NCBI GenBank assembly: GCA_002269645.1
Contig: NIVC01000059.1
Coordinates: 310,001-374,000, forward strand
Source of the DNA: Macrostomum lignano
Taxonomy: Eukaryota
Direction of reading: 5' to 3'
Length of the DNA: 64,000 nt
Of the stretch, positions 2,901 to 64,000 are shown piece after piece. Numbering within the stretch: position 1 is the stretch's first letter; the number at the start of each line of letters is the position of its first letter. A model generated the notes under the pieces. That model did not search any database and was not told the origin of the DNA. It saw only the letters and a program-made list of their open reading frames with translations. The translations under genes were made by a program, and so were the position numbers.

Positions 2901-4777
2901 TAGTGTTCCGCCGCTGCGAGTTTTGACCTCCGTAACCGTAACAGTAGCCGTAAGAAAGAAGCAACTTCCGTAGCCAAATTTTGCCGTCATTACGGGCTAA
3001 AAAAGTCCGTAACCATAATTTGCCGTAACTGTAGCCGTAATGTATAACAAAAATTGATATTTTTTCATGAAAAGTGGGGCAGACAGAAAAGGACAGATAA
3101 AAAGGATAAAAGGATAGCAATAAAACGTACTTGTTGTTCGTTCATGCATTAATATTAATTTATTTTTTTCGTAAATATAATATCTTTATCTAAGTATTCT
3201 ATAGCATTGTTGTATGCAATTGTGTGCTTGGTGCCTCTTTCAGTTTTCTGTGTTGTGATTCTGTTTTGTTTCGCTACAATATGCTAAGGAGCTAAATGCT
3301 ACATATGGCTAAGAAATAAGAATGCCAGATTCTTAGTCTCTTGCAGGCTTTGACTGGCTCTCTCTGTCTTGCTGCTATCATGCTATCGCTATGCTATGCT
3401 ATGCCGGATGCCTAATGAGAAAATTTGTGAAAAAATTCATTTTTTGTTTTCAAAAAGTTTTGTAGATATTTAGAAACTTAACAAATGTAAAAAATAATAA
3501 TAACTAGTAAAACAAAATGAAAACTGGTTGAAGTTGATATAAAAAATTTTCTTTTATAACACTAAACAGTTAAAAATAGATAATTTTTGTTACGGCTACC
3601 AATTACGGCAAGTCTAGAAAAATCTCCGTAATCCATAACCGTAAGCTCAAAATATGTCTGTAACCGTAATCCGTAATGAAAATACGGCTTCAAAAGTGTC
3701 GTAGCCGTTGTAGAGATCTCCAAACACAGTAGCCTACTAAAAGTAGTAACATAAAATTATGAACACAAATTTAAAAATAGCTATGTGTCATACTCTATTT
3801 TTAGTAATACCAGTCATATCACGCAAACAGCGAGTGACTATGCTATTGTTCGAAAAACCGGTTCTTGACATCTATTTTTAGAACTTCCAAATATGGTAAA
3901 TGTTAACCTGAATGTGACCCAAGTCTCACCCCTTTCTATTCAAAAACCCCACCTGTCAAATATCAATAATAAAATTCCTTTCGTGAACTCATCAAAAAAC
4001 CAGTTTTGAGCTCAAGGTCGACTCAAGGCCAACAAATTGTGTATAAATATAAACGAAAAATCCGAGCTGAAATCTCAGACTCGGAGCAGCCTCTGAAGAT
4101 CTTGAAGCTTGCTGGAGCAGCTAAGCGGGGCTATATCTCTGAGGAAGAGAAACACCAATTGGTAAGCTTTGTTCAAGTCTTCGTTATTTTGATTATTGAG
4201 AGCGATTGTTATTGCCGGCCGTTACTGTTCAGTTGATTTTATTGAGTCTATTGAGTTTGAGGCCTCCCTTTTTCCTAAGGGATTGGATAGGATCTGCGGA
4301 CCGATTCCGATACCCTTAGAGGATTATTGATTTGATTGATTTTGGTTATCCTAGATTAACCGATAGGAGCACACGACTCCGATTCCATTAGTTCTAGAAG
4401 AAGACGCCCTTTCTGGAGGACCTTGTATTGAAGTTGATTTTGTTATTAGGGCGCATCGTTGACATTGATTTCGGCACTCGAGAATATATTGAATTCTGCA
4501 CTTGAAGAAATACTGCGACGTCAATTTAATTGTTACGCTCTCACTTTCGGCCGATTCTAGACTTCAAGGAGACTACCCCAGGAGGAACAGCTCTACGGAG
4601 ACGAGCTCTACAGACACGCGCGACAAAGAAGAGGAGCCCGCAACAGTAAGTGATCACTGATTTTGTTCCCAGGCTTAAGTGTCTGGAAGTGGGAGTTTTC
4701 GGGGGACTGATCACCTCCCGAATCAACTCTTCACCGTAATTTGCCATAGCCATAGCCATAATTACGGCGGAACACTA
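2901..4777. mobile_element. Non-autonomous hAT-like element
   Basis: 13-bp TIR TAGTGTTCCGCCG / CGGCGGAACACTA; exact 8-bp TSD AAGGCCAC (2893-2900, 4778-4785); many subterminal CCGTAA/TTACGG motifs; no transposase ORF. Confidence 0.88.
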
Positions 4778-13700: not shown

Positions 13701-16614
13701 ATTGGGTTCACTTCACGTGCATGTTGATTTAAAAACATCCATTCAGACGAATGAAAAGTTGCTGTTTTAAGATAGTGGGTGTGTGCTTTCTTGCTAATAA
13801 GATCGTAGCTAGATAGTCTTACTCCATCCACTCCCTAGGTGTGAAACTAAAACGGATACCAAAAATAGCACCAGCAAATCACTTGAACAATCGGCCTTCA
13901 AAATGTTTCTTTCCCTAGTTCGTTAGTGCCATTTTTGGTTTGCTAGTTTCCAACCGAGTACAAAAAATTGAAGAAATTGTTTTCCCTAGCAGAGATTAGA
14001 AAGTTCAGAAACGTACAAACCTTTATTGAGTTTCATCTTCATCTGCACGTTCTCCACGCTACTCCAAGGCAAACAGTCCCGGCCCGACTCTGTCCAGTTC
14101 GTCCGACCAGTGTACACCACATTCGCTCCGGCATTTTTGCTCACGGCGCAGTCGAACTCTTTAGTAGCGGCTGTAATGTGCTGCGTTAGTTTGTTAGATA
14201 AATCGCAACAGGCCACCCGCAGAGAATCGCCTAAGCTACCGAAGTTTCTTTCACCAGCCCTAAATTGATGTCTCAGTGAACGGAATGAATACTAGCTTCT
14301 TCGACTGCTTTGGCTGTAATCAACACCATTGACTCACCGCAGTAAGGGACGTCGCACAAGCCAGCGTTTAGTCTTTCAGAGTCCATGAAGAAGCAGTAGG
14401 GTCCGCCTGAATAAGCTTCCAATTGACCAAACCTTCCAATATGCATTGGTTTGTCTTCTAAAAGAAGTCACGGATTAAAGCTGATGGAGAAACTAATTAG
14501 CTTTATTAATTAGAGTATATTCAGCACACAAACCAACATCCCGGATGATCATAACAGCAGCGGTCCTGTCTGATCCGCATGGCTCCGTTTTGCTGTTGCC
14601 GCACTGCCTGTCGCAGCTGGTCCAGCTCCCGTCGGCCAGAGTGGCAGCGGCCTCGGAGCTGCCGCAGAGGCAGTCGCCGCGGTTCAGCAGCGCTGCAAAC
14701 GGAGCGTTGAACTTGTCGCAGCACTGGGCGCACGGCTCAAAGGCCTCCAGGCCTCCGCTGTAGCACGTGATGTTGAAAGCCGTGTCCGCTGTCACTGGGA
14801 AGCAGCCAATTATTTCCCGTCTGGGTCCTGTGTGAGCGCATGGAGTGCGTCAGTTCAAGAGTGAGAGAGTCAGTCAGTCAGTCAGTCAGTCAGTCAGTCA
14901 GTCAGTCAGTCAGTCAGTCAGTCAGTCAGTCAGTCAGCCAGTCAGTCAGTCAGTCAGTCAGTCAGTCAGTCAGTCAGTCAGCCAGTCAGTCAGTCAGTCA
15001 GTCAGTCAGTCAGTCAGTCAGTCAGTCAGTCAGTCAGCCAGTCAGTCAGCCAGTCAGTCAGTCAGTCAGTCAGTCAGTCAGTCAGTCAGTCAGTCAGTCA
15101 GTCAGTCAGTCAGTCAGTCAGTCAGTCAGTCAGTCAGTCAGTCAGTCAGTCAGTCAGTCAGTCAGTCAGTCAGTCAGTCAGTCAGTCAGTCAGTCAGTCA
15201 GTCAGTCAGTCAGTCAGTCAGTCAGTCAGTCAGTCAGTCAGTCAGTCAGTCAGTCAGTCAGTCAGTCAGTCAGTCAGTCAGTCAGTCAGTCAGTCAGTCA
15301 GTCAGTCAGTCAGTCAGTCAGTCAGTCAGTCAGTCAGTCAGTCAGTCAGTCAGTCAGTCACTCACTCACTCATTCACTCGCTAAGTCAGTCACTTACGAG
15401 TTGCAATTGGGAGAAACTCTGTCAGCGGCAAACCCGGAGGTAAGCGGCACCTGGACTCAGTCTCTGAGAAGTTGAGTTTCATCAGCAAGCCACCCAGTAC
15501 TTCAGCATTCGAGCTCCCTCTCTGCAGCATGCGTGCTGCATCATTCCATCGCATGCACTGCTTGTAGATCACGTAGGGCTGTACAGGTGGCTTAACCGAA
15601 TAGTTTCCAAGTGTTTTTGAATCGGAAGGATCAATCGTAATACTAGATGGCCCATAGACAACTGCATAGCTTGCGTTTCCAAGGTAGTTACTTCCGTCGA
15701 GACTTCTCCTACAGTCGGAGCTTTTATTTTTTGCTGCAAAAAATTGTTTTGACTCGCATTTTTGCGGGAAAATCTATTTTCACGCATTTATAATGCTGGA
15801 AATACATCGCTTAAAATTAATTTCAAGAATTTATAGTCACTGCTGAGTTCGTCTCGTAGAAAAGCAGCTGTAAGTACGAGTTATTCAATGTATAAACCGA
15901 CTTTTAGTCTCAGTACTGTAGCTTCTACCGGGGTTATGGGGATCTTTAGATGCTTACAGTCTTGCAGGTGCCAAGTGGATATCTAAGCTTAGTCGTGGAG
16001 GTGTCAGGTCGATCTCTAAAGCTAAGTAAATCTCGAAGGACCCGAGGTGAAGCTTAACTACACAAATTCGCAGGTTGTAGAAGGAAGCAAACATAAATTT
16101 AGAACTTTCAAGGCAGCTTACACTTTACTAGCAGTTTCAGTTGGCTCATCACGGCTGATTCAGTTTGCTCCAATGCAATCAAAAACGCTTGCGTCGGCTT
16201 GTTAAAAAAAATAGTTTCCGATTTAGACAAATCAAAGTCGTAAAGTTTGATTTTTTCGCTTGTGTTACTCTTAGAGCCGAGCTCTACATTGTAAATATCC
16301 GATGTCGACAGCATCGGAACAATTCTACTCATGGTGACGGCGTGAGTCGGGCAGATGTACACATCCGGGAACTGGTACGGCAGAGTGGACACCGTTATTG
16401 TTGTTAACACCGGAGCCTGCTGGTACCTGTCGAACAGGGTGTACAGGTGGTAGCCGAACCCGCTGTAGGTAGCCAGCAGAAAAGTGAGCCATAGTGACCT
16501 GCCGATGAAGCTGGACTGCTCAGAGAATCTGCCCAGTCCGTGAGCACTTGTGTAGCTGCAGAACTGCTTGACAGGTGAGCTCAGCTCATGCTGGTCAGCG
16601 GGTTCGCTGCTCAT
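10755..16614 (-). CDS. DEG/ENaC (FaNaC-like) channel subunit with kringle[WSC]-kringle ectodomain insert, copy A (~1035 aa; final splice donor anomalous)
   Basis: Exons 16614-16122, 15733-15398, 14827-14534, 14457-14338, 14230-14021, 13665-13580, 13518-13326, 13249-12894, 12458-12259, 11946-11330, 10957-10755 (3108 nt). Motifs: FCSYTSAHG, TM1, FPDVYICP, GMCHQF, thumb CNC, LVADIGG-ALGLWSGVSILTVCE TM2. Confidence 0.88.
14868..15362. repeat. (CAGT)n microsatellite in channel A intron 2
   Basis: ~120 tandem units. It explains the SQSV ORFs. Confidence 0.98.
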
Positions 16615-19127: not shown

Positions 19128-20517
19128 TCAATAAAATAAGCAATTGGATTTTATATGATAAAAGCGTGCATTAAATGTATAATCATTTGTTAACCATGTC
19201 GTAGTATTTCGCAGAAACATTAGATAGCGCTCTACCGTTCGTGTGCTTTTTTTGCCGGTGATCTTGCAAATGTCAGCATTTAAGAAGCTATCATCGGCGA
19301 GTTCTTTCACAACTGTTGGACGCACGCAGTGGGCGGTGTACCGACGACTAAGTCCAGCAGCTTGTGAAATGGTCGACATGAGACTCGCCAAGGTGTTGAC
19401 ACCGACAGGCTGTTTAGCACAGTACCAATTAGACGTTTTCCAGTTGGAAACTTTTGGCTTCAAAAAGAAAGGCGTGCCTGGAGCAGCACCAGAGCTGCTG
19501 CTAGAAATCGACTCGCTTTGCTTACGTAGATACATTTTTAGTGCCTCGACTGGGCACTTTTCTGCGATTGAGACCATCACCGCGTTCTTGTAGTCATCGC
19601 ACGCTTCTCGGTTGAGGCTGTTGCCTACATTCTTAACTTTGCCAAGCCTAAGCTGCACAACCTCCGCTCCGTCGGGCCTCTTCTCAAAGATAAAGCTGTT
19701 CTCACTGAGTCAGCGAAGCCACTCGCGTCCCCGATTTCCAAAGTAATAGATGCAGTTGTAATAAACTTCGTGCAACAACGCCGTCGGATTTTCTCTGCTG
19801 AAGTAAGCGGCCAGTTTGCGCAAATCGTCCTCCTCCAGGTCTTCAAAATGTTTAGATCTGCCACCTGCACTGATGAAACTACGAGCCAGTGCTTTCAAGG
19901 TCGCATTGGCATTAGAGAACTCTCTGTCGGAAATGATATTCATTCGCCTGGTCTTCATCAGATGTCGGTACAATGCCGCTCGCATACAAATCAGAGTAGA
20001 CGATGCCGGAAGGTTGCCGTCACGCTTCCTGAAGGTTCCATAGAACAACCGTAGTGCAGATGCAATGGCCTCAGCGGAATTGGTTTGCAGATCGACACGG
20101 GCCTAAAAAGTTACGACGTTCAAAAGCAATACAAGAATTGACGAAAAGACCTATAGAAAATCTGAATTCAAAGCATGTAGAATACAAAGATTAACTGAAA
20201 CCACAGGATATCTGATTTCGAAGCAACTAACCTCGGGATGTTCATCCATGAACGTGTTCAGCTTTTTTTACATAACATTCGGCTTGCTGTCTGCTACTGG
20301 CGTTCTCTGCTGAGCGTTCCAACTCGGAAATCGCAGCCTCCAGCCTGTTTAAATCAGGCTCGGTGCTCATCAGCTCCTCCAGCATGGCGTCATCGATATC
20401 TTCGGGCAAAGCATAGTTGGTGTCCAGCGGTCCATTATCAAGCTCCTCCTGCGTCCGATCGCGAGCATGTTGTTCGAGTGTTTTATCCGACTCGACAGAG
20501 GACGGGCCGCTAACCAT
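19128..20517 (-). pseudogene. Crypton-type tyrosine recombinase (DUF3504-like), disrupted
   Basis: FYGTFRKRDG...GNRGRE...CPVEALKMYL...PVGVNTL...YTAHCVR...TGKKS...ERY matches the YR catalytic layout. Intron at 20231-20103. Lesions: in-frame TGA at 19712-19710 and a +1 frameshift in an A7 run near 20265. The usual TGH is TGK. Confidence 0.85.
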
Positions 20518-22100: not shown

Positions 22101-22502
22101 TTCTATCTAAAAAATGTCTGAAATGAACGCGCGCAAAGCAAAGTGTACAGAGCCCATGCTGCTTCCGCACTGCACACCAAGTCCGATGACAGCAAAATTA
22201 GATTTCAAAAACACCATCACCAAAGCGAGTTAAATGTCTGCCTGCTGGCATATTGATGCAGCTCAGAAAAAAATCCATCTACCGATCATTCACCATCCAC
22301 CGTTTCACTGACGGGGAATCCGCAAACAGATGCTCCGCCAACGATCGGATCAGACTGCATGCACTTTTACACGGCTTTTTGCTGGCCAATAACTGGCTGG
22401 CTGGCTGATCAGCAAACGCATAAATGCAGCAGTGCCTCAATTGAAATGCTTCCAATGCTTCAAATCCTGCTCAGCATCAGATAGTCACCAACCAGCCCAA
22501 CG

Positions 22503-25500
22503 ATGAGCAGCGAACCCACTGACCAGCATGAGCTGAGCTCACCTGTCAAGCAGTTCTGCAGCTACACAAGTGCTCACGGACTGGGCAGATTCTCTGAGCA
22601 GTCCAGCTTCATCGGCAGGTCACTATGGCTCACTTTTCTGTTGGCTACCTACAGCGGGTTCGGCTACCACCTGTACACCCTGTTCGACAGGTACCAGCAG
22701 GCTCCAGTGTTACAAACGATAACGGTGTTCACTCTGCCGTATCAGTTCCCGGATGTGTACATCTGCCCGACTCACGCCGTCACCATGAGTAGAATTGTTC
22801 CAATGCTGTCGACATCGGATATTTACAATGTAGAGCTCGGCTCTAAGAGTAACACAAGCGAAAAAATCAAACTTTACGACTTTGATTTGTCTAAATCGGA
22901 AACTCTTTTTTTTAACAAGCCGACGCAGGCGTTTCTGTTTGCATTGGAGCAAACTGAATCAGCCGTGATGAGCCAACTGAAACTGCTAGTAAAGTGTAAG
23001 CTGCCTTGAAGGTTCTAAATTTATGTTTGCTTCCTTCTACAACCTGCGAACTTGTGTAGTTAAGCTTCACCTCGGGTCCTTCGAGATTTACTTAGCTTTA
23101 GAGATCGACCTGACACCTCCACGACTAAGCTTAGATATCCACTTGGCACCTGCAAGACTGTAAGCATCTAAAGACCCCCATAACCCCGGTAGAAGCTACA
23201 GTACTGAGACTAGAAGTCGGTTTATACATTGAATAACTCGTACTTACAGCTGCTTTTCTACGAGAGCGAACTCAGCAGTGACTATAAATTCTTGAAATTT
23301 ATTTTAAGCGATGTATTTCCAGCATTATAAATGCGTGAAAATATATTTTCCCGCAAAAATGCGAGTCAAAACAATTTTTTGCAGCAAAAAATAAAAGCTC
23401 CGACTGTAGGAGAAGTCTCGACGGAAGTAACTACCTTGGAAACGCAAGCTATGCAGTTGTCTATGGGCCATCTAGTATTACGATTGATCCTTCCGATTCA
23501 AAAACACTTGGAAACTATTCGATTAAGCCACCTGTACAGCCCTACGTGATCTACAAGCAGTGCATGCGATGGAATGATGCAGCACGCATGCTGCAGAGAG
23601 GAAGCTCGAATGCTGAAGTACTGGGTGGCTTGCTGATGAAACTCAACTTCTCAGAGACTGAGTCCAGGTGCCGCTCACCTCCGGGTTTGCCGCTGACAGA
23701 GTTTCTCCCAATTGCAACTCGTAAGTGACTGACTTAGCGAGTGAGTGACTGACTGACTGACGGACGGACTGACTGACTGACTGACTGACTGACTGACTGA
23801 CTGACTGACTGACTGACTGACTGAATGACTGACTGACTGACTGACTGACTGACTGACTGACTGACTGACTGACTGACTGACTGACTGACTGACTGACTGA
23901 CTGACTGACTGACTGACTGACTGACTGACTGACTGACTGACTGACTGACTGACTGACTGACTGACTGACTGACTGACTGACTGACTGACTGACTGACTGA
24001 CTGACTGACTGACTGACTGACTGACTGACTGACTGACTGACTGACTGACTAACTGACTGACTGACTGACTGACTGACTGACTGACTGACTGACTGACTGA
24101 CTGACTGACTGACTGACTGACTGACTGACTCTCTCACTCTTGAACTGACGCACTCCATGCGCTCACACAGGTCCCAGACGGGAAATAATTGGCTGCTTCC
24201 CAGTGACAGCGGACACGCTGAATGCTTTCAACATCACGTGCTACAGCGGAGGCCTGGAGGCCTTTGAGCCGTGCGCCCAGTGCTGCGACAAGTTCAACGC
24301 TCCGTTTGCAGCGCTGCTGAACCGCGGCGACTGCCTCTGCGGCAGCTCCGAGGCCGCTGCCACTCTGGCCGACGGGAGCTGGACCAGCTGCGACAGGCAG
24401 TGCGGCAACAGCAAAACGGAGCCATGCGGATCAGACAGGACCGCTGCTGTTATGATCATCCGGGATGTTGGTCTGTGTGCTGAATATACTCTAATTAATT
24501 AAGCTAATAATTTCTCCATCAGCTCTAATCCGTGACTTCTTTTAGAAGACAAACCAATGCATATTGGAAGGTTTGGTCAATTGGAAGCTTATTCAGGCGG
24601 ACCCTACTGCTTCTTCATGGCCTCTGAAAGACTAAACGCTGGCTTTTGCGACGTCCCTTACTGCAGTGAGTCAATGGTGTTGATTATACAGCCAAAGCAG
24701 TCGAAGAAGCTAGTATTCATTCCGTTCACTGAGACATCAATTTGGGGCTGGTGAAAGAAACTTCGGTAGCTTAGGCGATTCTCTGCGGGTGGCCTGTTGC
24801 GAACTATCTAACAAACTAACGCAGCACATTACAGCCGCTACTAAAGAGTTCGACTGCGCCGTGAGCAACAATGCCGGAGCGAATGTGGTGTACACTGGTC
24901 GGACGAACTGGACAGAGTCGGGCCGGGACTGTTTGCCTTGGAGTAGCGTGGAGAACGTGCAGATGAAGATGAAACTCAACCAAGGTTCGTGTGTTTCTGA
25001 ACTTTCTAATCTCTGCTAGGGAAAACAATTTCTTCAATTTTTTGTACTCGGTTGGAAACTAGCAAATCAAAAATGGCACTAACGAACTAGGGAAAGAAGC
25101 ATTTTGAAGGCCGATTGTTCAAGTGATTTGCTGGTGCTATTTTTGGTATCCGTTTTAGTTTCACACATAGGGAGTAAGACTATCTAGCTACGATCTTATT
25201 ATTGGGCTGTTAGGAAAGTTCTGTCCGTTTTGAGTAAAATAGGTTGGAGCGAGTTTTTATAGGAACGCAGCAGTGTTACTCAGTAAAATAATTGCCATCG
25301 CAATCGATGACCCTCTGCTAACGAGAGGGCAGACTTTGGAAGCCAGCTCTGTAGAAATCCTTGGGCTGTGATTCAAAAAAGTTAGTAATGCAGTCTTTGA
25401 CCCCTTTGTCATCTTCAAACGTTTTCTCTTTCAGATGATGGTGCAGCGCTCGAAAAAGATGGTAGTCTGTAGGGGCCAGATCGGGGCTGTAAGGTGGGTG

Positions 25501-28500
25501 GGGCAGCCCTTCCCAGCCCAGATCCAGCAGCTTTTGTCGGGTCAAATTGGCGGTGTGCGGCCGAGCGTTGTCATGAAGGAAGCGAACATGCTGACGCCCT
25601 GGACGCTGTGTGCGGAGGCAGTCGGCCACATTCTGCAGCTGGTTACAGTAGAGCTCGGCGGTGATGCTGGTGTTGGGCGGCAGCAGCTCGAAGTATACAA
25701 CTCCTTCACTGTCCCACCAACAGCAGAGCATCACCTTCTTAGGGTGCAGTGGGGCCTTTGGCTCTGGCTGTGGCGGCTTGCTGGCATCGACCCACTGGCG
25801 CTTGCGGTGTATATTAACGTACATCACCCACTTCTCATCACCAGTGAGTATTGAGGCCAGCCAGTCTGTTGTTCTCTTGTAGAAGAGCAGTGAGGTGCAA
25901 ATGTCTGCTCGGCTTTGACGGTCCCTGTCAGTCAGGTCATGGGGGGTCCACTGTCCGAGCTTGCTTTTCTTGCCCATGGCAGCCAGGTGTTCAGCGACTT
26001 GCACATGGGAGCACCCGAGAGTGGCTGCCAGCTCTCATGTAGTCTGGTGCGGATTGGCCTCCACAAGTGTCCGCAGCAGCTCAGTGTCTATCTCAGATGG
26101 GCGTCCAGGGCGAGGTTCGTCAGCAAGGCTGTAGTCGCCGCTGCGAAAGCGATCAAACCAACGACGGGCTGTGCGGTCAGAGACAGCATCCTGGCCAAAT
26201 GCACTGCACAGGCGTCGAGTCGATTCGGCTGCTGTAATACCTGCTAGAAAATCATATAGCATGCACTGCCTTAGAGCGATGCTGTTTAATTCAAAATTTC
26301 TGGCCATAATTGGGCGCTGAAAAGCAAATGACTTGGTTAGAATGACCACAACTCTGGCTGTATATGCATAACACAAGTATTGGATCCAACACAGCTTCAT
26401 GATCCTCTGCATAGAAAAATAAAAAAACGGACAGAACTTTCCTAACAGCACACACCCACTATCTTAAAACAGCAACTTTTCATTCGTCTGAATGGATGTT
26501 TTTAAATCAACATGCACGTGAAGTGAACCCAATGCGCCAATGCGCCGAACTATAGTTGATAAATATTGCATTTCAGGTGTTCGCTTTGTTGAAAAACTGC
26601 TGCGACTAAAGATTCAAACCCCCGACCGTATTGGGAACACCAGCGACAACTTTTGTCGTCCAGTGAGCATAGTCATTGACCTAGCGGAAACTGAGAACGG
26701 CACCTTCACGTGAGTTTCAGTAGCCTCATTTTTTGCAAGCAGCTGTAGAACGACTGCATCTCATTTTTAACATCACTTTCAGACGGCACCCAGTGTTAAT
26801 CTCCAATTCTCCCGTCTGCTTTGCCGATCCATCTCTGCTGCACACAATGTCGGTACCAATTTTTCAAACTCAGTTTTTTGAGATGGCATTCGAACGCTGC
26901 ACAATTCCTACTTGTTGTAAGTCGGAGCCTAAAAGTTGTTAAAACTATAAATTCTGAGCTTCACGCATTGCCTGTCGGCACAAAAATTCCAGCTGCTGAA
27001 ACCAGCGTCAGAGGCGTCTTCACTGACTCGGTCGGCAGCCACCTGCTCGCCAGGCAATTCAGCAACGACCTCAGCATCGGCCTGGCCGACTGCACCTTCG
27101 CTGGCCAGAAATGCACCAAGGAGCACTTCGTCAATATCGACCATCCGCAGCTGGGAATGTGCCACCAGTTTCTCAAGCAGAGCTTCATCGCCAACATGTC
27201 GAGCACCCAGCTAGCAGGGAGTCAGCTGTCAATAACGTACTTCACCGACTCCACAGACTCTAAAGGGAAAACAGTCGAGGGCATGCCCGAAATGACCAGT
27301 GCGTTTCATAACGGTATGAGCTTGGAGATCAGCGACCTGGCGTTCAAGGTAAGCGGTTTGTTTTTGATAGAGGAATCACAATCCGGATGTGAAAGTGCAC
27401 AATGAGATATCACTAGCGAATCAGTAAAGGCACACAAGGAAAGTTGCTCGAGGTGTAGTCATTAAAAATTTTTGCACCGAATCATAAAAATGACTGAAGT
27501 CAAAGACAAAAACACGCAAAACTGTACACTACAAACTCACAAGCGAGAGCAGATAACCCTAAGGCACAGATATTATATAGTATCTGTGCCCTGAGGTAAC
27601 AAAAAAGTTACATCCAGAAAGTCAATGCAGACTTGACTGAACCTACCTTGGAAAGACTTAGAAAGCATGTTTCTTTTATTTTGTGCCAAAATGCGAAACA
27701 TTTTTAAAAATTCAAATGAAATTGTCAAATGTCTCAAATGATTGTAAAATAAGAAGTCTAGTGCAGAAACCCCACGTAAATCCAAAACTATTACCACAAC
27801 CTTCCACTCCTAGGCGATCATTGTTCCGGAAGATTCGTTCCCCTGGTCGTCCAAGGGCATCGACGTGGCCGCCTCCCAACGCATGGACGTGCAGCTCAGG
27901 TTTGAAAGATACTCCAGACTCTCAACTGCATCGAGGCCGTGCCTAGAGACCACCGAGCCAATTGTATATCGACTGCCGTCATGGAAGAAATCCATGTCAA
28001 ACGAAGACCTAAAGTGGGTAACTTTCTTCAGTGAAATCAAATTTTCTTGAAAATTGCCTACGGCAAATTAAAGCAGAAGGTTTCAATGGCTCCTTTAAAC
28101 TGAATTAAACATTCATCAGAATGAAGGAAGCTGCAGAGTTGGTCGTCCACTCTGGGAATTGGTCTGAGATGATCAGAAGACTCCGGGCGATGCTGCTACT
28201 GCCGAACAGTTCAAGGTCAGTGCTTGAGAAATAATTGCGTGGAGCTTTAGCTAGCATCGAAGGTACGAGCGTAGAACAGATAAAAGTGCATGATATTCCA
28301 CTGGTCATAACTTAACGTTTATCCAGCGTTCTGACTGCCACTGAGCGACAGTTCAACGTCTCCGGTAGAGAGGATTGCATCAACTCGTACATTGTACAGC
28401 AGTTCATCGAAAACTGCAACTGTTTACCATCGATTCTGCCAGTCAAGGTGGACTTATTCGACCAGTACAGCTACTGTTTCGACGCCAAGGACATCGGCAA

Positions 28501-29361
28501 CTTGTCTATCGATCTTGAGACACGGTACAATGAGCAGGTATCGCGGATAAACCAGTACGAGTTTGAGGCGATGAAGCGCTGCCAGTCTCCGTGTCGCACA
28601 GACGGCTACAGTGTCCATTACGTCACTTATCCGTGGCCGAACCTGAAGACTGCCAGATCCACTCTGCTATTGCAGAAGCTTGCAAGCAACTACGGCTACC
28701 CAACCATCATTAGCGGACTTAGAGGTGTAGCCAATTTCTATCAAGCGTACTTGAAGTCACTTAGCCTCGCCGGGGTGCCTTTTGCCAATCAGAGCGCCAA
28801 GGACATTCTGAGCTTCGAAAAGGAGCTCGAGTCGCTGCAGAACCGCCTGGCCAGACTGACAGTTCAGGCGTGGACCTCCAGCAGTCAGGAGATCACCGAA
28901 GAGGAGGCCTACCCTACCAAGAATCTGGTTGCGGACATCGGAGGTAAATACTTGCGTACAATGTAGTCATTGAGCAGTTGATGTTTAAGTATAAGGCTTT
29001 GCTTGCGTGAATATGGGGACAGTTAAGTGCGGAGGATACTACTAGTGTGCATCGAGAATTTGCCAGTTTGTGAAAGGAATTTTCCTTTGAAGCCTTAACA
29101 CAGAGTAATTTAACTACGGCGTGGCTGGATTTGTAAATATTCACTGTTTGCACTGCACCATCAGGCGCCCTCGGCCTCTGGTCTGGCATCTCAATCCTAA
29201 CTCTGTGCGAGCTGCTCGAGCTGCTCATCTACATCAGCCGCGGGCTGGCCCGCAGACCTCAGCAGAATCCGAGTCGAGAGCGACAACAAACAGCAGCTGG
29301 TGGAGTCAGCCAGTTGGACCCAGAAGCAGTCGGCCTGGAGTCTGGCAAGATTGCGCTCTGA
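22503..29361 (+). CDS. DEG/ENaC (FaNaC-like) channel subunit with kringle[WSC]-kringle ectodomain insert, copy B (1035 aa)
   Basis: Exons 22503-22995, 23385-23720, 24171-24470, 24546-24665, 24775-24984, 26577-26662, 26724-26916, 26993-27348, 27814-28013, 28327-28943, 29165-29361. All GT-AG and in frame (3108 nt). TM2 LVADIGGALGLWSGISILTLCELLELLIY. Confidence 0.9.
23746..24130. repeat. (GACT)n microsatellite in channel B intron 2
   Basis: Inverted counterpart of 14868-15362, about 25 units shorter. Confidence 0.98.
25202..26449 (-). mobile_element. Mariner (DD34D) element, inactive, in channel B intron 5
   Basis: TA then TTGGGCTGTTAGGAAAGTTCTGTCCGTTTT; the inverse TIR at ~26424-26449 lacks its outer 4 bp. 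CDS 26307-25276 has WTPHDL, TGDEKW, HDNARPH, YSPDLAPTD and two nonsense codons (26037-26035, 25320-25318). Absent from copy A. Confidence 0.93.
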
Positions 29362-31397: not shown

Positions 31398-33040
31398 CAA
31401 CAACACAACAACAAAAACAACAAAGTACGCTGTCAGGTGACTTTGTACGTAGTGTACAAAGTCAGCGTCAGAGCCTGGGCGCGAACAAAGGCCGCACCAC
31501 TGGCAGAGTCCGGGGCGCCAGCGTGGGTCGGCAGGCAGTCGACGAAACGTCGAGTTCGGGCCTGGTCGCGCCGGTAGGGTGCCTGCAGCGTTAGCAGCAG
31601 CACCTCCTGCACCGGCTGCGGGCAGTAGGACTCGGCGCGGATGATGTGGCCTGCCAGCTGGAGTCGCCGAAGTCGCAGCAGTTAACTTGGACGGGCCAGG
31701 CCGGCGCGGCGATAGAGTGCCGCATTGGTGATCCGCTCGTCGCTGATCTTAAAGGCGGCACGCAGCAGGCCAGCGTGCGCCGCGTTGACTTGCTGTTCGA
31801 GCGAATTTGTCAGCGTCCAGGTCTCGGTGTTGTACAACAGGACGGTCTCGCCTGGAACAGCGCCGCCCTCTGGCGGTCAGGTAGGGCCTCGGACTGCAGG
31901 ACCGCCCTCACAGAGCGAAAGGCAGCCCAAGCGAGCCCGCGGCGACGCCGCAGATCTTCGCGGACGTCAGGTACCAGACCGCCGAGGTAGACGAACTGCT
32001 GACAGCGCGGAAGCTCCGTTACCTGCCCGCCAGCGCCTCGGCAGAAAATTGCGGCCTCGATGTCACCCGGCACGCAGAGCACAACGGTCTTCTTCGTGTT
32101 GACCACCAGGCCGACGCTCGCTGCAGCGCTAACTAGCTTGTCCAGCTGGCGCTGGGCGCCCTCTACGGTCGAGGACAGCAGGGCGAGGTCATCGGCGTAG
32201 CCAAACACGCTGAGCCGTTTCTCCGGTTGACGTCGACCCACGCGTCGCCGCAGTAGGAAGCCGTCTTCGTCGGTATGAATAGCAGTTCGTAGCACCCAGT
32301 CAAGCACCAGGACGAACAGGAACGGCGCTAGAGTGTCCCCCTGGAGCACCCCGGAGAATGTCTCGAAGGAGTCCGACAGGCCGTCCGGCGTCATCACAGC
32401 TGCTCTCGTAGCACAGTACAACGCCATAATGGCGGAGATCAGCTGTTCTGGTACATGATACGCTCGGAGCAGGGATCGCAGCCCTCGCAACCGAGTCGAA
32501 TGCCTTCATGAAGTCAATGAAGACAACAATCAGGTCCAACTGGCGCGTGCGCGCCTCCTCGATGATTCGGCGGAGAGCTAGGATCTGCGCCACTATGCCA
32601 CGGTGGGGCTAAAACCCGTTCTGCTCAGGTCGCAGGTAGGGATCCAGCACCGGTTGCAACCGTGATAGCAGCATCCGGTTGAACGACAGCACAGCACAGG
32701 ATTGCAGGCAGATGCCTCGGTGCTCGCGTCTAGTCGTGTAGTGCCCGGCTTCTTTGGAATGGCGATGATGTGCACCATGGTCCACTCGGTGGGTGCCATT
32801 TCACCTAAGAGCACGCGGTTCATCACACGGGCGACCTCACTGGCCACACAGTGGATGCGCAGCGCCTCGATGGGCACCTCGTCCAGACCCAGCGCCTTGC
32901 CGCCCGGCGTCTTCTGGGCAAGAATTACAACTTCAGCCATGGTGACTGGTGCAACGTTAAAACTGTCCTCAGACGGCAACGGCGTCTCTGGCGGCAGCGT
33001 CAGGATGTTGGGCAAGGATGTTGGGTACACATTCAGGTTC
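31398..33040 (-). mobile_element. 5'-truncated, frameshifted non-LTR retrotransposon (RTE-like reverse transcriptase)
   Basis: IAIPKKP, QILALRRIIE, FIDFMKAFDSV, GVLQGDTLAPFLF, GYADD and FVYLGG are spread over several frames; a (TTG)-rich tract lies at ~31398-31420. Confidence 0.92.
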
Positions 33041-33847
33041 TTCTAGAACTTTGCTAGACTGAAAGCCAACTAGAAACAGCACCATGGTAGATCGTAGCAA
33101 AACAAGGCCGGCTCATTGTTTAGACGTTTTCAGATTCTTTATTTGCATGTTTTACTCCAAAGTCATGCCGAAATTGCGATGTCTCGCCCCTTAATGGTTT
33201 TATTTCCGGTCCAGGGAAGCTTTAGTAGTCCCTAAAATTTCCTAACCCTCATAGACGGATGTTACATTCGGTCCTGCACTTTTGTGCCGCTCAGTTCCGT
33301 ATAGCTGCAAATTCTACACCGGGAGTGCATAACATAGCAAAGTGTAGAAAGATGAAAATGGCCATTTGTCTGGAGCTGGTTGCCCAATTAAAGCCGGAAG
33401 AACTGCATGAATCCAGGGAAATCAGTAATTAGGACTGCAACAGAGCCTTTTGGCTAAATTTTGCTGCAGCTTTAGGCCAGAATTGGGGCGCTTTCTGGAG
33501 TTCAAAACGTTACAAGCTTAAAGCTTCACCAGCAGGAAATTTACGAGTATGTTAGATCGTTTAAAAGCAAAGCATGGTCAGAGGCCGGTTTTCGCTACCA
33601 AATTCAGTAGCGAGACAAAAAGCTTTCAGATTTTAGCACCAAACTAGCAATCTAGTTATTCCCTTTGGGGCGGCCAATAAGCAAGGGAAGAAGATTATTC
33701 ACGTAAATTTCATTCGCCTTGACATCTCAGCATTTCCCCCAGTAAGCCTTGACATCTCAACAATTCCCTCAATAAGCCTTGAAATATCAGCATCCTTAAA
33801 TGGCAAGCATCCCTGGACATCCCTGAATTAGTATTAACTAATAGCAA

Positions 33848-37356: not shown

Positions 37357-37974
37357 CTACCGGACCGCTGATTATTTATCCACTGTTTCCGTGAGCCCTT
37401 GTCCTTAAAAAATGATCAGCTAAATGTCAACAAGAGTTGTTTTGTCAACCCCGAAATTCTCGCCGTTTCAATTCGCATTCCTACCTGTTAATTTAGGAAG
37501 TCTAATACCTGAGTTTGATTGACAGTCGACCTGTCATTGAGCGATAACGGTCCAACAGCAGCAGATAAGGAGGCCCTTGTAGAGCTGCTGTAGTGTAGCA
37601 CAAGTCTAATAAAATTCAACTAAAGGAGTGTCTAAAAATGACGCAACCCTGTGTTGGACGCAGGCACAGCCTCTTGTACGAGCATTTGATATCGCTCAAC
37701 ACCCGGCCAGCCCCCAAACCCCCGGCTGCCCTCCCCAACGCCCTAAAGCATTTCAGGCAGCGGGTGACAACAACACATGATAATTAGCTTCTCTTCGAGC
37801 GGTGAGCATGGCTTGGAATGATTGACAGCACCTGAGATCGGGCTTTAATCGCGATGAAGAGGCCCCGAGAGATTTGGTTAAAATACCAAAAGTGTAAGAC
37901 AGATGGAGAAGATACTTATTGGTCTAAGATTTCTGGGCCACGCACCGAATTCACCCAGAACCCTTTCAAACAGC

Positions 37975-38886
<912 letters not shown>

Positions 38887-39974
38887 TCAGTTGGCAAAGA
38901 GGAAGTCCGAAGTCCATAGAGACAGCAATAGCAACTTGAACTTTTAAAGTCCCTCCTAGCGCGTAACTTTGAGCACAGTCAGGCTCAGCACTGCACAGAG
39001 CCGCAGAGTGTGCTCACAAATAAACAGTCGAAATTTAGACCTCGCCGGATTGCACTGGAGCGGCACCCTCGACTTTCGCCCTTCACTCATCCCCACATAC
39101 GAGCGTATAAAAATTCTAACTGGCTCTTCGCTCTACCATGCAGTTAGTGTCGTCTACTCAGTTGCATAGGCCCTGCTGCGGGCACAATACACTGACTGCG
39201 CTTAACATAATATGCGAATTAAGTGGCCGGTGGCCTTCCCTCTGTCTCTCCTCTCTCTCCTCTCTTCTCCTTTAACACTTAACAGCCAAGGCAAACTGGG
39301 GGTGGCGGGGCTAAGGGGAGGTGGGTCGCCTTGGGGTAGGAGGGGTTGTTTTGGCGAATAATAAAAAAATCGATAACACCGCAAGCGCACTGAGCCGCAG
39401 GCCCAGTCTGGCCCACTCCTATTGGCTCTGCACCCGATTCATTCAGTTTTTTCTTTCTCTCTCTCTCTCTCACTCTCTCTGTCTCTTTCTCGGGTCCTCA
39501 GCTCTCGTCTAGTTTTTCAGGCCTCTAGTTGAAGCTCTATCTCTTTAAATTCATTTCTTTACCGGATTTTCTTTATACATTTATTTTTCTCTCGCCCGCT
39601 GCAAAACAAACAAAGCGGACCAGGAGTATCTATTGCGCGAATTGCGCAATAAAACAAAAAAGTTTTTTTAAATTACACGTGAACCGGAGTAAAAGACAGG
39701 CCTTGCATACGGAAGTCTTTTCAACTCAGATTATAATTAAAAGCTAATACAGACTCAAGACAAAAGGGCTAGTAGCAGGACTTAATCCTTTCGACTATTC
39801 GACACGGCCAACAGAAATCGAAGCGCAAAATTCGATTTGGTCGGCGCCGATGGGCCAAGCGGAGCGCCGCCTGTCGTTGTTTCTTTTGATATGCAGAGTT
39901 CGCCGTTAATAGTAGTCGCAGGAGCGGCGGCGGCGGCGGCGGCGGCGGCGGCTGCGACCTATCGAACCGATCGG

Positions 39975-53511
<13,537 letters not shown>

Positions 53512-63700: not shown

Positions 63701-63745
63701 TTTAATGTTTGACATTGTGGCTCTTGTGTGTTTGACATAGCGCTT
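57735..63745. repeat. 23-bp satellite (ATGTTTGACATGGTGGCTCTTTA), ~6 kb, with higher-order block duplications
   Basis: Direct. Blocks 60353-61895 and 61921-63857 are tandem duplicates that include unique flank. Confidence 0.97.
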
Positions 63746-63798
63746 CTTTTATGTTTAGCAGTTTTTTGTTTTTAAGGTGTTTTAATAAAAAATCATTT

Positions 63799-63868
63799 TG
63801 CGCTACCAAGATTCGAACCCAGTTCGCTACATTAGCAGTCCAGTCTGTTCGTATCTAGGCTATCTTTT
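63799..63868 (-). other. Degenerate tRNA-derived sequence (tRNA pseudogene or SINE head); 5'-truncated second copy at 61838-61895
   Basis: A-box-like TAGCCTAG, anticodon-loop-like CTGCTAA, B-box GGTTCGAATC, and a T6 run just downstream. The acceptor stem does not pair. Confidence 0.5.
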
Positions 63869-64000
63869 TTTAATTGGAGCACATGAATTGTGGCCCTTAT
63901 AATTCAATTCGGTTAGAAAGTCGCAAGTCGGTTAGAGTAAAAATTTATGACATAATCAATTTCTCAGTCAGCCAATATCAGTCTTTATTGAAGTTAGCAA

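What the first reader, a model, noticed from the sequence alone, without database searches (positions are those of the whole stretch)
23385..24665. WSC domain nested inside a kringle as a single phase 1-1 exon
Kringle 1 Cys1-3 are in exon 2 and Cys4-6 in exon 4. The entire WSC domain is exon 3 (300 nt in B, 294 nt in A), flanked by phase-1 introns, as are exons 2, 4 and 5. This is a clean exon-shuffling signature that gives a three-level nested architecture (WSC in kringle in channel). Kringle 2 has long insertions in the same C3-C4 loop. Exon 3 could be skipped in frame, giving isoforms with or without WSC.
Basis: partly seen in the sequence, partly recalled or inferred. Interest (0 to 1): 0.7.

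Follow-up and report, generated by a model that had tools for sequence, protein, structure and literature searches.

The report
WSC domain nested inside a kringle
In a flatworm (Macrostomum lignano) sodium-channel gene, a single exon places a whole sugar-binding WSC domain in the middle of a small, disulfide-knotted kringle domain; this is a clean and apparently undescribed case of one protein module built inside another, and its function is untested.

Summary
The window is Macrostomum lignano DNA. It carries two inverted copies of a DEG/ENaC channel gene: B on + (22503-29361) and A on - (16614 downwards).

In B, exon 2 (23385-23720) holds kringle Cys1-3. Exon 3 (24171-24470, 300 nt; 294 nt in A) is a complete WSC domain. 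Exon 4 (24546-24665) holds kringle Cys4-6. All junctions are GT-AG, and exons 2-5 are phase 1-1.

- **Kringle halves:** profile-profile comparison matches exon 2 to kringle columns 1-62 and exon 4 to columns 59-84. Spliced together they cover 1-84 of 84 (97.6%), and controls score far lower.
- **Family conservation:** at least seven diverged M. lignano paralog lineages keep the layout. Three RNA-seq-based GenBank models keep the same three exons and phases.
- **Fixed features:** cysteine counts per exon (3, 10, 3; one paralog has 11 in the WSC exon) and stalk lengths (15-16 and 21 residues) are nearly constant.
- **Position in the channel:** the cassette kringle1[WSC]-kringle2 splits the channel's extracellular ASC domain.

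Two things are not shown. AlphaFold models were of low confidence and gave no coordinates, so the cross-insert disulfides remain untested. There is no evidence that exon 3 is skipped. No relative was found outside M. lignano, and none without WSC.

Verdict: real, a new variant of a known kind, moderately interesting.

The parts
22503..22995 (+). Gene B exon 1. It encodes the N-terminus with the His-Gly motif (TSAHGLGRF), TM1 and the first part of the extracellular ASC domain. It ends in phase 1.
   Evidence: Splice assembly. Pfam ASC matches residues 18-147 to profile positions 1-129.
23385..23720 (+). Gene B exon 2 (336 nt, phase 1-1). It encodes the N-terminal two thirds of kringle 1 with Cys1, Cys2 and Cys3, then a 16-residue stalk (SPPGLPLTEFLPIAT).
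   Evidence: hhalign of the family exon-2 alignment against 78 canonical kringles: template columns 1-62, probability 93.7%, E 1.9e-7. Controls.
23726..24130 (+). (TGAC)n microsatellite of about 101 copies that fills most of intron 2. The copy in gene A is at 14868-15392.
   Evidence: Tandem Repeats Finder.
24171..24470 (+). Gene B exon 3 (300 nt, phase 1-1). It encodes one complete WSC domain with 10 Cys.
   Evidence: Pfam WSC 29.9 bits against a 27.8 cut-off. Foldseek of the paralog model to yeast Wsc1 7pz2: target TM-score 0.69-0.71, probability 1.00.
24546..24665 (+). Gene B exon 4 (120 nt, phase 1-1). It encodes a 21-residue stalk and then the C-terminal third of kringle 1 with Cys4, Cys5 and Cys6 (GGPYCFF...GFCDVPYC). 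An alternative in-frame acceptor lies at 24597.
   Evidence: hhalign template columns 59-84, E 5.4e-9. phmmer to the HGF kringle 1 end and kringle 2 start, E 1.3e-8. Paralog transcript models have the equivalent 123-nt exon.
24835..24984 (+). Gene B exon 5 (150 nt, phase 1-1). It encodes kringle 2 Cys1 and Cys2.
   Evidence: K2 family against canonical kringles: probability 97.9%, E 5e-13.
26577..26709 (+). Gene B exon 6 (133 nt, phase 1 to 2). It encodes kringle 2 Cys3 (NFCRP) and the first half of the long Cys3-Cys4 loop.
26783..26916 (+). Gene B exon 7 (134 nt, phase 2 to 1). It encodes kringle 2 Cys4, Cys5 and Cys6.
26993..29361 (+). Gene B exons 8-12: 26993-27348, 27856-28013, 28120-28215, 28327-28943, and 29165-29361 including the stop codon. 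They encode the rest of the ASC extracellular domain and TM2 (GALGLWSGISILT). The full product is 1029 aa.
   Evidence: Frame-constrained GT-AG assembly. Pfam ASC E 7.4e-40.
15398..15733 (-). Gene A exon 2 (336 nt, phase 1-1). It encodes the kringle 1 N-terminal part.
14534..14827 (-). Gene A exon 3 (294 nt, phase 1-1). It encodes the WSC domain.
   Evidence: Identical to the corresponding part of UniProt A0A1I8HN37 (P0001).
14338..14457 (-). Gene A exon 4 (120 nt, phase 1-1). It encodes the kringle 1 C-terminal part.
14021..14170 (-). Gene A exon 5 (150 nt, phase 1-1). It encodes the start of kringle 2.

Best explanation
**What it is (shown).** The region is a real, conserved nested domain. 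These genes belong to a lineage-specific subfamily of DEG/ENaC (amiloride-sensitive type) channels in Macrostomum lignano. Their extracellular domain is interrupted by a cassette kringle1[WSC]-kringle2, soon after TM1 and just before the conserved CxFxGxxC segment. Within kringle 1, a complete WSC module encoded by one symmetrical phase 1-1 exon sits in the surface loop between Cys3 and Cys4.

**How it most likely arose (inferred).** A class 1-1 WSC exon was inserted into a phase-1 intron of kringle 1, which is classical exon shuffling. This happened before the paralogs radiated.

**How it most likely folds (inferred).**
- The WSC domain folds on its own. Its first and last beta-strands are neighbours in an antiparallel sheet, so its two ends lie close together.
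- It hangs on two length-invariant stalks of 15-16 and 21 residues.
- Exon 2 and exon 4 residues then close the kringle through the three canonical disulfides (1-6, 2-4, 3-5). Each of these must bridge the two exons.

**What it most likely does (inferred).**
- The insert replaces the loop that carries the anionic centre of the lysine-binding site in classical kringles. Kringle 1 is therefore probably a scaffold that presents the WSC domain, not a lysine binder.
- The cassette is probably a constitutive extracellular binding 'antenna' (for a glycan or matrix ligand) on the variable finger region of the channel.
- Its role would be to tether or modulate gating. It is probably not an alternatively spliced option.
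For: **Gene structure**
- GT-AG junctions, exon lengths and phases are confirmed in both window copies.

**Kringle identity**
- Exon 2 and exon 4 match complementary parts of a kringle profile: columns 1-62 and 59-84. The spliced pair matches 1-84 of 84 at 97.6% probability.
- Controls score much lower: reversed 9, column-shuffled at most 19, WSC family against kringle 8.8.
- The unspliced alignment also bridges the insert (92.5%).
- Exon 4 plus exon 5 match the HGF kringle-kringle boundary (E 1.3e-8).

**WSC identity**
- Pfam gives 29.9 bits for B exon 3 and 40-41 bits in two paralogs.
- Foldseek finds Wsc1 at target TM-score 0.7. The top hit is Kremen1 KR+WSC, E 1.6e-5 over 202 columns.

**Conservation across the family**
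- An exhaustive HMMER search found the layout in P0004, P0005, P0007, P0009, P0010, P0011, P0018 and P0049, all from M. lignano.
- Transcript-derived GenBank models of three paralogs have K1N exons of 297-303 nt, WSC exons of 276-312 nt and K1C exons of 123 nt, all phase 1-1. The annotation method is described in PMC5730564.
- Cys counts per exon are 3, 10 and 3. Stalk lengths are 16 (15 in one paralog) and 21 in six sequences.
- The two kringle pieces evolve at the same rate (41% and 40% mean identity). WSC evolves faster (29%).

**Geometry and position**
- WSC strand order is beta1-beta5-beta3-beta4-beta2, so the terminal strands are adjacent (PMC5014086).
- The ASC profile is split at positions 129|137.
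Against: - Pfam's kringle model does not reach its cut-off on kringle 1 (12-15 bits against 34.3).
- A HMMER profile of the spliced kringle 1 finds no significant kringle in the PDB (best E about 0.7, C-terminal part only). The kringle assignment of exon 2 therefore rests on profile-profile comparison and motifs alone.
- The AlphaFold2 models are only moderate to low in confidence (pLDDT 66.8 and 59.7). The Cys1 region scores below 50, and helices are predicted in the Cys2-Cys3 loop.
- No stand-alone kringle appeared among the Foldseek hits.
- Disulfide closure could not be read because coordinates are not returned.
- No donor gene, no WSC-less relative and no species outside M. lignano was found. 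The shuffling event and its timing are therefore inferred.
- Kringle 2 has an intron in the same loop but in phase 2, so it gives no independent sign of an ancestral phase-1 recipient intron.
- No transcript evidence exists for the two window copies themselves.
- The function is entirely inferred.
Confidence: 0.8

Rival explanations
1. Cassette-exon reading. Exon 3 is alternatively spliced, so the animal makes channels with and without the WSC domain. The WSC-less form would carry a kringle 1 with a 37-residue Cys3-Cys4 loop, similar to kringle 2. This reading is compatible with the nested architecture. It differs only on whether the WSC exon is optional.
For: Exon 3 is 300 or 294 nt long and lies between two phase-1 introns, so skipping it keeps the frame. 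Without WSC the Cys3-Cys4 distance would be 36-37 residues, close to the 28-34 of kringle 2.
Against: - Frame symmetry holds equally for exons 2, 4 and 5, and it is the norm for extracellular modules (PMC8001218). It is therefore not evidence of skipping.
- All transcript-based models of the three paralogs examined include the WSC exon.
- No WSC-less protein appeared in any search.
- The exon is kept in every paralog, together with stalks of fixed length.
Confidence: 0.15
2. The two kringle pieces no longer form one kringle. Exon 2 would encode a diverged, partly helical domain of its own. Exon 4 would be a relic hairpin that packs elsewhere, for example against kringle 2 or WSC. The architecture would then be nested only in the historical sense.
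For: - Pfam and a HMMER profile do not recognise exon 2 as a kringle.
- AlphaFold2 predicts two helices in the Cys2-Cys3 loop and gives pLDDT below 50 around Cys1.
- The Cys1-Cys2 loop carries 41-51 residues instead of about 21.
Against: - All six Cys are invariant, three in each exon. That is an odd number per exon, so neither piece can pair all its cysteines on its own.
- The two pieces diverge at the same rate.
- The stalks have near-invariant length.
- The hallmark motifs are kept: C-R-x-T-L-x-G-E-E-Y-x-G-N, C-x-x-W, S-R-C-R-x-P and G-P-Y-C-F.
Confidence: 0.1
3. Origin by deletion instead of exon insertion. An ancestor had kringle - WSC - kringle in tandem (compare Kremen's kringle-WSC pair). 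It then lost the last third of the first kringle and the first two thirds of the second. Two complementary fragments were left that now fold together around the WSC.
For: Kringle and WSC are neighbours and pack tightly in Kremen1 (PMC5014086). Kremen1 is the top structural hit of the model. Tandem kringles are present in the same protein (kringle 2 follows directly).
Against: - It needs two precisely complementary deletions. No remnant of the lost parts is visible.
- The profile coverage of the two pieces abuts almost exactly (1-62 and 59-84).
- The symmetric phase-1 exon that equals the WSC domain is what exon insertion predicts directly.
Confidence: 0.05
4. Annotation or assembly artefact. 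The WSC exon would belong to another transcript or to a decaying pseudogene, and its apparent continuity with exons 2 and 4 would be accidental.
For: The automatic UniProt models of the window genes disagree with each other. P0001 shortens exon 4, and P0002 and P0003 drop it. No transcript-based model of genes A or B themselves was retrieved.
Against: - Reading frames are open with consensus splice sites in both copies.
- The same exon chain reproduces, residue for residue, three RNA-seq-derived GenBank proteins at other loci (PMC5730564).
- The layout is conserved down to 24-37% identity.
Confidence: 0.02

Closest known systems
Kremen1/Kremen2 ectodomain (kringle-WSC-CUB; PDB 5FWS)
   Same: It has the same two module types in one extracellular unit. 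In Kremen1 the kringle and WSC pack tightly and together form the ligand (Dickkopf) surface (PMC5014086). Kremen1 is the best structural match of the predicted model (E 1.6e-5, 202 aligned columns).
   Different: In Kremen the WSC follows a complete kringle in tandem. Here it lies inside the kringle, between Cys3 and Cys4. Kremen is a single-pass receptor with a CUB domain, whereas this is an ion channel. By sequence the WSC here is no closer to Kremen (E about 2) than to yeast Wsc1 (E 0.008).
Classical class 1-1 kringle modules of plasminogen, tPA, HGF and invertebrate multi-kringle proteins
   Same: Six-cysteine pattern, hallmark motifs, and phase-1 introns at both outer borders of each kringle. 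Exon 4 plus exon 5 align to the HGF kringle 1/kringle 2 boundary.
   Different: Both kringles here are far below Pfam's cut-off and carry long loop insertions. Kringle 1 hosts a whole foreign domain in the loop that, in lysine-binding kringles, bears the Asp55/Asp57 anionic centre (established knowledge of plasminogen kringles; not tested here).
WSC domains of yeast Wsc1 (cell-wall stress sensor, PDB 7PZ2) and polycystin-1
   Same: Same fold (target TM-score 0.69-0.71, rmsd 2.9-3.5 A). Pfam WSC match. An extracellular, cysteine-rich domain found in mechanosensory proteins.
   Different: Ten cysteines instead of eight. It is inserted in another domain instead of being an N-terminal head. Carbohydrate or cell-wall binding was not tested.
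DEG/ENaC channels with extra modules in the variable finger region (ENaC inhibitory-tract/GRIP region; the extra cysteine-rich domain of C. elegans degenerins); closest solved relative FaNaC (PDB 7YVB)
   Same: Two TM segments, the His-Gly motif, the GxS-type TM2 motif, and a Pfam ASC match of E 7e-40. The best PDB match is the FMRFamide-gated channel (E 1.7e-16). The insert lies in the region aligned to FaNaC residues 160-184, before the CxFxGxxC segment (these sub-alignments are weak).
   Different: No described DEG/ENaC channel carries kringle or WSC modules, as far as the literature searches show. The comparison with ENaC and degenerin inserts comes from general knowledge and was not tested here.
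Multi-level nested domains such as integrin beta subunits (beta-I domain in the hybrid domain in the PSI domain)
   Same: Three levels of domain-in-domain insertion in an extracellular region.
   Different: The domain types are unrelated, and the host here is an 80-residue disulfide knot instead of a larger fold. Recalled from general knowledge, not tested here.

Membership tests
Kringle (Pfam PF00051), for kringle 1 = exon 2 + exon 4 | Score at or above the curated Pfam gathering threshold (34.3 bits) | tested here: not met
   The spliced kringle 1 of four paralogs gave 12.2-14.7 bits on the C-terminal part only, or no hit at all. Exon 2 alone gave no hit. A HMMER profile of the spliced kringle 1 against the PDB found kringles only at E 0.7-1.
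Kringle (Pfam PF00051), for kringle 1 = exon 2 + exon 4 | Full-length profile-profile similarity to canonical kringles | tested here: met
   hhalign against 78 kringles cut from 21 invertebrate multi-kringle proteins: probability 97.6%, E 2.9e-12, template columns 1-84 of 84. Exon 2 matched 1-62 and exon 4 matched 59-84. Reversed, shuffled and WSC controls scored 9-19.
Kringle (Pfam PF00051), for kringle 1 = exon 2 + exon 4 | Six conserved cysteines with the hallmark motifs (C..G..Y.G; C..W; CRxP; GP[WY]C[YF]; C..P.C) | tested here: met
   All six Cys and the motifs are invariant in every paralog that covers them.
Kringle (Pfam PF00051), for kringle 1 = exon 2 + exon 4 | Disulfide connectivity 1-6, 2-4, 3-5 and the kringle fold | not testable with these tools
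   The AlphaFold2 models had pLDDT 66.8 and 59.7 and no coordinates were returned. Foldseek cannot bridge a 130-residue insert. No stand-alone kringle hit appeared. Only the odd Cys count per exon (3 + 3) argues for cross-exon pairing.
Kringle, for kringle 2 = exons 5-7 | Profile-profile similarity and six cysteines | tested here: met
   hhalign probability 97.9%, E 5e-13. Six Cys in eight paralogs, with a Cys3-Cys4 loop of 28-34 residues. Pfam gave only 16.7-21.7 bits on the N-terminal part.
WSC (Pfam PF01822) | Score at or above the gathering threshold (27.8 bits) | tested here: met
   Exon 3 of gene B alone scored 29.9 bits. Paralogs P0157 and P0161 scored 40.2 and 41.4 bits. Within the full-length B protein the score is 25.6-25.9, just below the threshold. 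Paralog P0153's WSC is too diverged to be detected.
WSC (Pfam PF01822) | WSC/PAN-like fold | tested here: met
   Foldseek of the paralog model: yeast Wsc1 7pz2 with E 2e-5, probability 1.00, target TM-score 0.69-0.71. Kremen1 with E 1.6e-5. The model's pLDDT in this part is 64-82.
DEG/ENaC channel (Pfam PF00858 ASC) | ASC profile match with two transmembrane ends and the conserved N-terminal HG and TM2 G-x-S motifs | tested here: met
   E 7.4e-40 for the assembled 1029-aa gene B product. The motifs AHGLGRF and GALGLWSGISILT can be read in the sequence. Best PDB relative is FaNaC, E 1.7e-16.
Class 1-1 mobile module acquired by exon shuffling | The domain coincides with one exon flanked by introns of the same phase (phase 1) | tested here: met
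   True in the two window genes and in three diverged paralogs. The Pfam match covers residues 7-87 of the 100-residue exon.
Class 1-1 mobile module acquired by exon shuffling | An identifiable donor module or a relative with the empty recipient intron | tested here: not met
   No relative without WSC and no family member outside M. lignano appeared among 1.84 billion representatives. The nearest WSC matches are multi-repeat proteins of diplonemids and oysters, which are not informative.
Alternatively spliced cassette exon | Transcripts that join exon 2 directly to exon 4 | not testable with these tools
   No read-level RNA data are available here. All retrieved transcript-based models include the exon.

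The most novel reading that the evidence does not exclude
The kringle1[WSC]-kringle2 cassette is a built-in extracellular tether or ligand sensor. The WSC domain, presented on a kringle scaffold at the top of the finger region, would bind a glycan or matrix component (as WSC does in yeast cell-wall stress sensors). It would pass force or ligand occupancy directly to the channel gate. That would make these channels self-contained mechanosensitive or glycan-gated DEG/ENaC channels that need no separate tethering proteins.
Probability: 0.15. Interest if true: 0.75.

Novelty: new variant of a known kind. Interest (0 to 1): 0.5.

Why it matters
Domain insertion and exon shuffling of class 1-1 modules are well-known processes. 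This case pushes them to an extreme.

- **For protein evolution and folding:** a 100-residue domain sits inside an 80-residue, triple-disulfide knot. All three disulfides of the host would have to form across the guest. It is a natural experiment on how much a small disulfide-rich module can tolerate. The gene structure (one symmetric exon, conserved in every paralog) gives an unusually legible record of how it was built.
- **For channel biology:** it adds kringle and WSC to the modules found on DEG/ENaC ectodomains. They sit in the region where other family members receive peptides, proteases or toxins.
- **For experiment:** the family of at least seven paralog lineages is in a flatworm for which a transgenesis method has been published. 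The question of what such an antenna does to gating can therefore be tested.

Its limits are that it is known from one species only and that no function has been shown.

Tried and rejected
1. **Pfam on single sequences.** It does not see kringle 1 (12-15 bits on the C-terminal third only). A HMMER profile of the spliced kringle 1 against all PDB sequences gave no significant kringle; the top 'hits' were chance talin matches at E about 0.4. Only profile-profile comparison with controls was decisive.
2. **Structure prediction.**
   - Model 1: paralog P0004, kringle1[WSC], 11-row alignment, pLDDT 66.8, pTM 0.57.
   - Model 2: gene A product as in P0001, kringle1[WSC]-kringle2, pLDDT 59.7, pTM 0.42.
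- Foldseek confirmed WSC and pointed to Kremen1. It cannot align a kringle across the insert, and no coordinates are available to measure Cys-Cys distances.
3. **Search for relatives lacking exon 3 or from other species.** A word-indexed search found 4 M. lignano proteins. The exhaustive profile search gave 210 hits, with family members only in M. lignano. A second word-indexed search with the family alignment added nothing.
4. **Donor of the WSC exon.** The best outside matches are WSC-repeat proteins of Diplonema and oysters, or unnamed metagenome proteins. No conclusion was possible.
5. **Shared intron between kringle 1 and kringle 2.** Kringle 2 does have an intron in its Cys3-Cys4 loop, but in phase 2 and in unalignable sequence. 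It gives no support for an ancestral recipient intron.
6. **Literature.** No paper in the library links kringle or WSC with DEG/ENaC or describes a domain inside a kringle. A FaNaC study tested three M. lignano DEG/ENaC genes without any peptide response and does not mention these domains.


Full report
**1. What the window is**

The region around the finding is eukaryotic DNA with GT-AG introns. A protein search with the translated exons returned only Macrostomum lignano proteins. One of them (UniProt A0A1I8HN37, P0001) is essentially the product of the minus-strand copy in the window.

The window holds two inverted, head-to-head copies of one gene:
- gene B on the plus strand, from the ATG at 22503 to the stop at 29359-29361
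- gene A on the minus strand, from the ATG at 16614 downwards

The copies are 96-98% identical from 7 nt before the ATG to the end of the penultimate exon. They are unrelated upstream and much more diverged in the last exon.

**2. The observation**

I rebuilt gene B exon by exon, requiring GT-AG borders and an open frame.

| Exon | Coordinates | Length |
|---|---|---|
| 1 | 22503-22995 | 493 nt |
| 2 | 23385-23720 | 336 nt |
| 3 | 24171-24470 | 300 nt |
| 4 | 24546-24665 | 120 nt |
| 5 | 24835-24984 | 150 nt |
| 6 | 26577-26709 | 133 nt |
| 7 | 26783-26916 | 134 nt |
| 8 | 26993-27348 | 356 nt |
| 9 | 27856-28013 | 158 nt |
| 10 | 28120-28215 | 96 nt |
| 11 | 28327-28943 | 617 nt |
| 12 | 29165-29361 | 197 nt |

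The product is 1029 aa. Exons 2, 3, 4 and 5 each begin and end in phase 1.

Gene A has the same borders: exon 2 at 15733-15398, exon 3 at 14827-14534 (294 nt), exon 4 at 14457-14338, and exon 5 at 14170-14021.

Exon 2 has three cysteines, exon 3 has ten, and exon 4 has three.

One detail to add is a second in-frame acceptor 51 nt inside exon 4 (24597), which an automatic UniProt model uses. Three transcript-based paralog models use the upstream site, and the 17 residues in question are conserved among paralogs.

**3. Is exon 3 a WSC domain?**

Yes.
- Alone it scores 29.9 bits against Pfam WSC (cut-off 27.8), over residues 7-87 of 100.
- Two paralogs score 40-41 bits.
- In the AlphaFold2 model of a paralog, this part (pLDDT 64-82) superposes on the yeast Wsc1 sensor domain with target TM-score 0.69-0.71. 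The Kremen1 ectodomain is the top hit.

**4. Are exon 2 and exon 4 two parts of one kringle?**

*Sequence-to-profile methods are weak.* Pfam sees only the last third (12-15 bits against a 34.3 cut-off). A HMMER profile of the spliced domain finds nothing significant in the PDB.

*Three other lines of evidence are strong.*

- **Kringle-to-kringle boundary.** Exon 4 plus exon 5 align to the end of HGF kringle 1 followed by the start of kringle 2 (E 1.3e-8). Exon 4 is therefore the end of a kringle that is immediately followed by another.
- **Profile-profile comparison.** I compared the family with 78 canonical kringles cut from invertebrate multi-kringle proteins found in the exhaustive search. 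Controls (reversed or column-shuffled queries, and the family's WSC alignment) score only 9-19.

| Query | Kringle columns matched | Probability | E-value | Score |
|---|---|---|---|---|
| Exon 2 alone | 1-62 | 93.7% | 1.9e-7 | 38.9 |
| Exon 4 alone | 59-84 | 95.9% | 5.4e-9 | 39.7 |
| Exon 2 + exon 4 spliced | 1-84 of 84 | 97.6% | 2.9e-12 | 64.9 |
| Unspliced alignment, bridging the insert | 1-84 | 92.5% | 4.8e-7 | 42.7 |

- **Family conservation.**
  - All six cysteines and the hallmark motifs are invariant.
  - Each of the two exons has an odd number (three) of cysteines, so neither can satisfy its cysteines alone.
  - The stalk lengths (15-16 residues after Cys3, 21 before Cys4) are nearly the same in six sequences only 24-54% identical.
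  - The two kringle pieces diverge at the same rate (41% and 40% mean identity), while WSC diverges faster (29%).

*What is not shown is the disulfide closure itself.* The two AlphaFold2 models are of moderate and low confidence (pLDDT 66.8 and 59.7). The Cys1 region is poorly predicted, no coordinates are returned, and Foldseek cannot align a kringle across a 130-residue insert.

**5. Context in the protein**

Kringle 2 (exons 5-7) is also a true but very diverged kringle (97.9%, E 5e-13). Its Cys3-Cys4 loop has 28-34 residues, and its other loops are long as well.

Each kringle as a whole is bounded by phase-1 introns. Kringle 2 has two internal introns, in phases 1 and 2.

The Pfam ASC match of the channel is split. 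Profile positions 1-129 lie before the cassette and 137-455 after it. With the cassette removed, the flanks align weakly to FaNaC residues 61-160 and 184-225. That places the insert just before the conserved CxFxGxxC segment, in the variable finger region.

The three-level description (WSC in kringle in channel) is therefore accurate.

**6. Distribution and age**

An exhaustive profile search of 1.84 billion representative proteins found the cassette only in M. lignano. At least seven diverged paralog lineages carry it: A/B, P0003, P0004/P0005, P0007, P0009, P0010 and P0011, plus fragments. All of them have the WSC between the kringle pieces.

For three paralogs with GenBank models I reproduced the proteins exactly from genomic exons.
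- The kringle 1 N-part exon is 303, 297 or 297 nt.
- The WSC exon is 300, 312 or 276 nt.
- The kringle 1 C-part exon is 123 nt in each.
- All are phase 1-1, and kringle 2 is in three exons with the same phases as in the window.

The GenBank annotation of that assembly was derived from RNA-seq-guided transcript assembly (PMC5730564). Inclusion of the WSC exon is therefore transcript-supported for the paralogs, though not directly for genes A and B.

The insertion predates the radiation of the family. No member lacks the WSC.

**7. Mechanism**

*Shown:* a WSC-sized, phase 1-1 exon lies in the Cys3-Cys4 loop of a kringle and is conserved with its stalks.

*Inferred:*
- **Origin.** A class 1-1 exon was inserted into a phase-1 intron. 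This is the standard exon-shuffling route for extracellular modules (PMC8001218).
- **Tolerance of the insert.** The first and last strands of the WSC sheet are neighbours (strand order beta1-beta5-beta3-beta4-beta2 in Kremen1; PMC5014086). The two chain ends can therefore leave through one loop.
- **Role of kringle 1.** The host loop is the one that carries the anionic centre of the lysine-binding site in classical kringles (general knowledge). Kringle 1 probably serves as a scaffold, not as a lysine binder.
- **Function.** In Kremen1 the kringle and WSC form one rigid ligand-binding unit. A similar composite surface, permanently fused and mounted on the channel's finger region, is the most economical functional reading. 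It would be an extracellular binding antenna that tethers the channel or modulates gating. This has not been tested.

**8. Rivals**

- **Alternative splicing of exon 3.** It is possible arithmetically, but the same is true of exons 2, 4 and 5, and no WSC-less product was found.
- **Origin by reciprocal deletions** from kringle-WSC-kringle. This cannot be excluded without outgroups, but it is less parsimonious.
- **The two kringle pieces no longer fold together.** This is disfavoured by cysteine parity and co-conservation.
- **Annotation artefact.** This is effectively excluded by the paralog transcripts.

**9. Novelty and verdict**

The proteins exist in UniProt and GenBank as uncharacterised 'WSC domain-containing' or hypothetical proteins. 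Kringle 1 is not annotated because it fails the Pfam threshold.

I found no paper that describes a kringle hosting another domain, or a DEG/ENaC channel with kringle or WSC modules.

The process (domain insertion by exon shuffling) is well known, so this is a new variant of a known kind and not a new category. Interest is moderate. It is a textbook-quality example for protein evolution and a testable oddity for channel biology. It is limited to one species so far and has no functional data.

Noticed in passing
window 22496-28949 (+) against 16621-11325 (-): Genes A and B are 96-98% identical, introns included, in a sharply bounded inverted block. The block starts 7 nt before the ATG and ends at the end of the penultimate exon. 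Upstream DNA is unrelated. The last exon (TM2) is only about 83% identical over 75 nt and then diverges completely. This looks like gene conversion between older paralogs, or a recent partial inverted duplication.
   Followed up: partly
window 25202-26446 (ORFs 25321-26034 and 26038-26463, - strand): A mariner/Mos1-type transposon copy (Pfam Transposase_1 E 5e-31, HTH_48 E 3e-20) lies in intron 5 of gene B, with its reading frame interrupted by one stop. It is absent from the same intron of gene A, so it inserted after the two copies were last homogenised.
   Followed up: partly
window 23726-24130 and 14868-15392: Long (TGAC)n microsatellites (about 101 and 131 copies, 96-97% pure) fill most of intron 2 in both gene copies, directly upstream of the WSC exon. 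Copy number differs between A and B.
   Followed up: partly
window 24597 (gene B) and the matching site in gene A: An in-frame alternative acceptor (ttattcag|GCGGAC) lies 51 nt inside exon 4 and is identical in both copies. UniProt model A0A1I8HN37 uses it, which removes 17 residues of the stalk between WSC and Cys4. Paralog transcript models use the upstream site.
   Followed up: partly
window 31813-33042 (- strand): Reverse-transcriptase fragment (Pfam RVT_1, E 6e-13) of a non-LTR-like retroelement downstream of gene B. One UniProt model (P0006) wrongly reads through from a channel gene into the homologous region at another locus.
   Followed up: no
window 19131-20102 (- strand), between the two gene starts: Two adjacent open frames. 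The first has a near-threshold match to DUF3504 (27.8 bits against a 29.7 cut-off). From memory, this domain is seen in Crypton-type tyrosine-recombinase-derived proteins. It may be a transposon remnant in the spacer between genes A and B.
   Followed up: no
window 1401-2540 (- strand): A 380-aa open frame with helix-turn-helix and DDE_3 transposase matches (a Tc1/mariner-like element).
   Followed up: no
window about 37900-39000, 40100-40700, 44250-51500 and 57800-64000: The second half of the window is dominated by simple and tandem repeats. These include a pure tetranucleotide array near 38-39 kb, several kb of (CAGA/GTCT)-like arrays at 46-51.5 kb with extreme strand skew, and a satellite with longer units from 57.8 kb to the end. 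Between them (51316-53508, + strand) are open frames with thrombospondin-type 'WSxWSxCS' motifs that gave no Pfam hit.
   Followed up: no
locus L003 (paralog P0153/PAA86857.1), exon 2962-3237: In this paralog the WSC exon is shorter (276 nt), has 11 cysteines and is no longer detected by Pfam WSC. Its position, phases and stalks are nevertheless kept. The insert may be degenerating or changing function in one lineage.
   Followed up: partly
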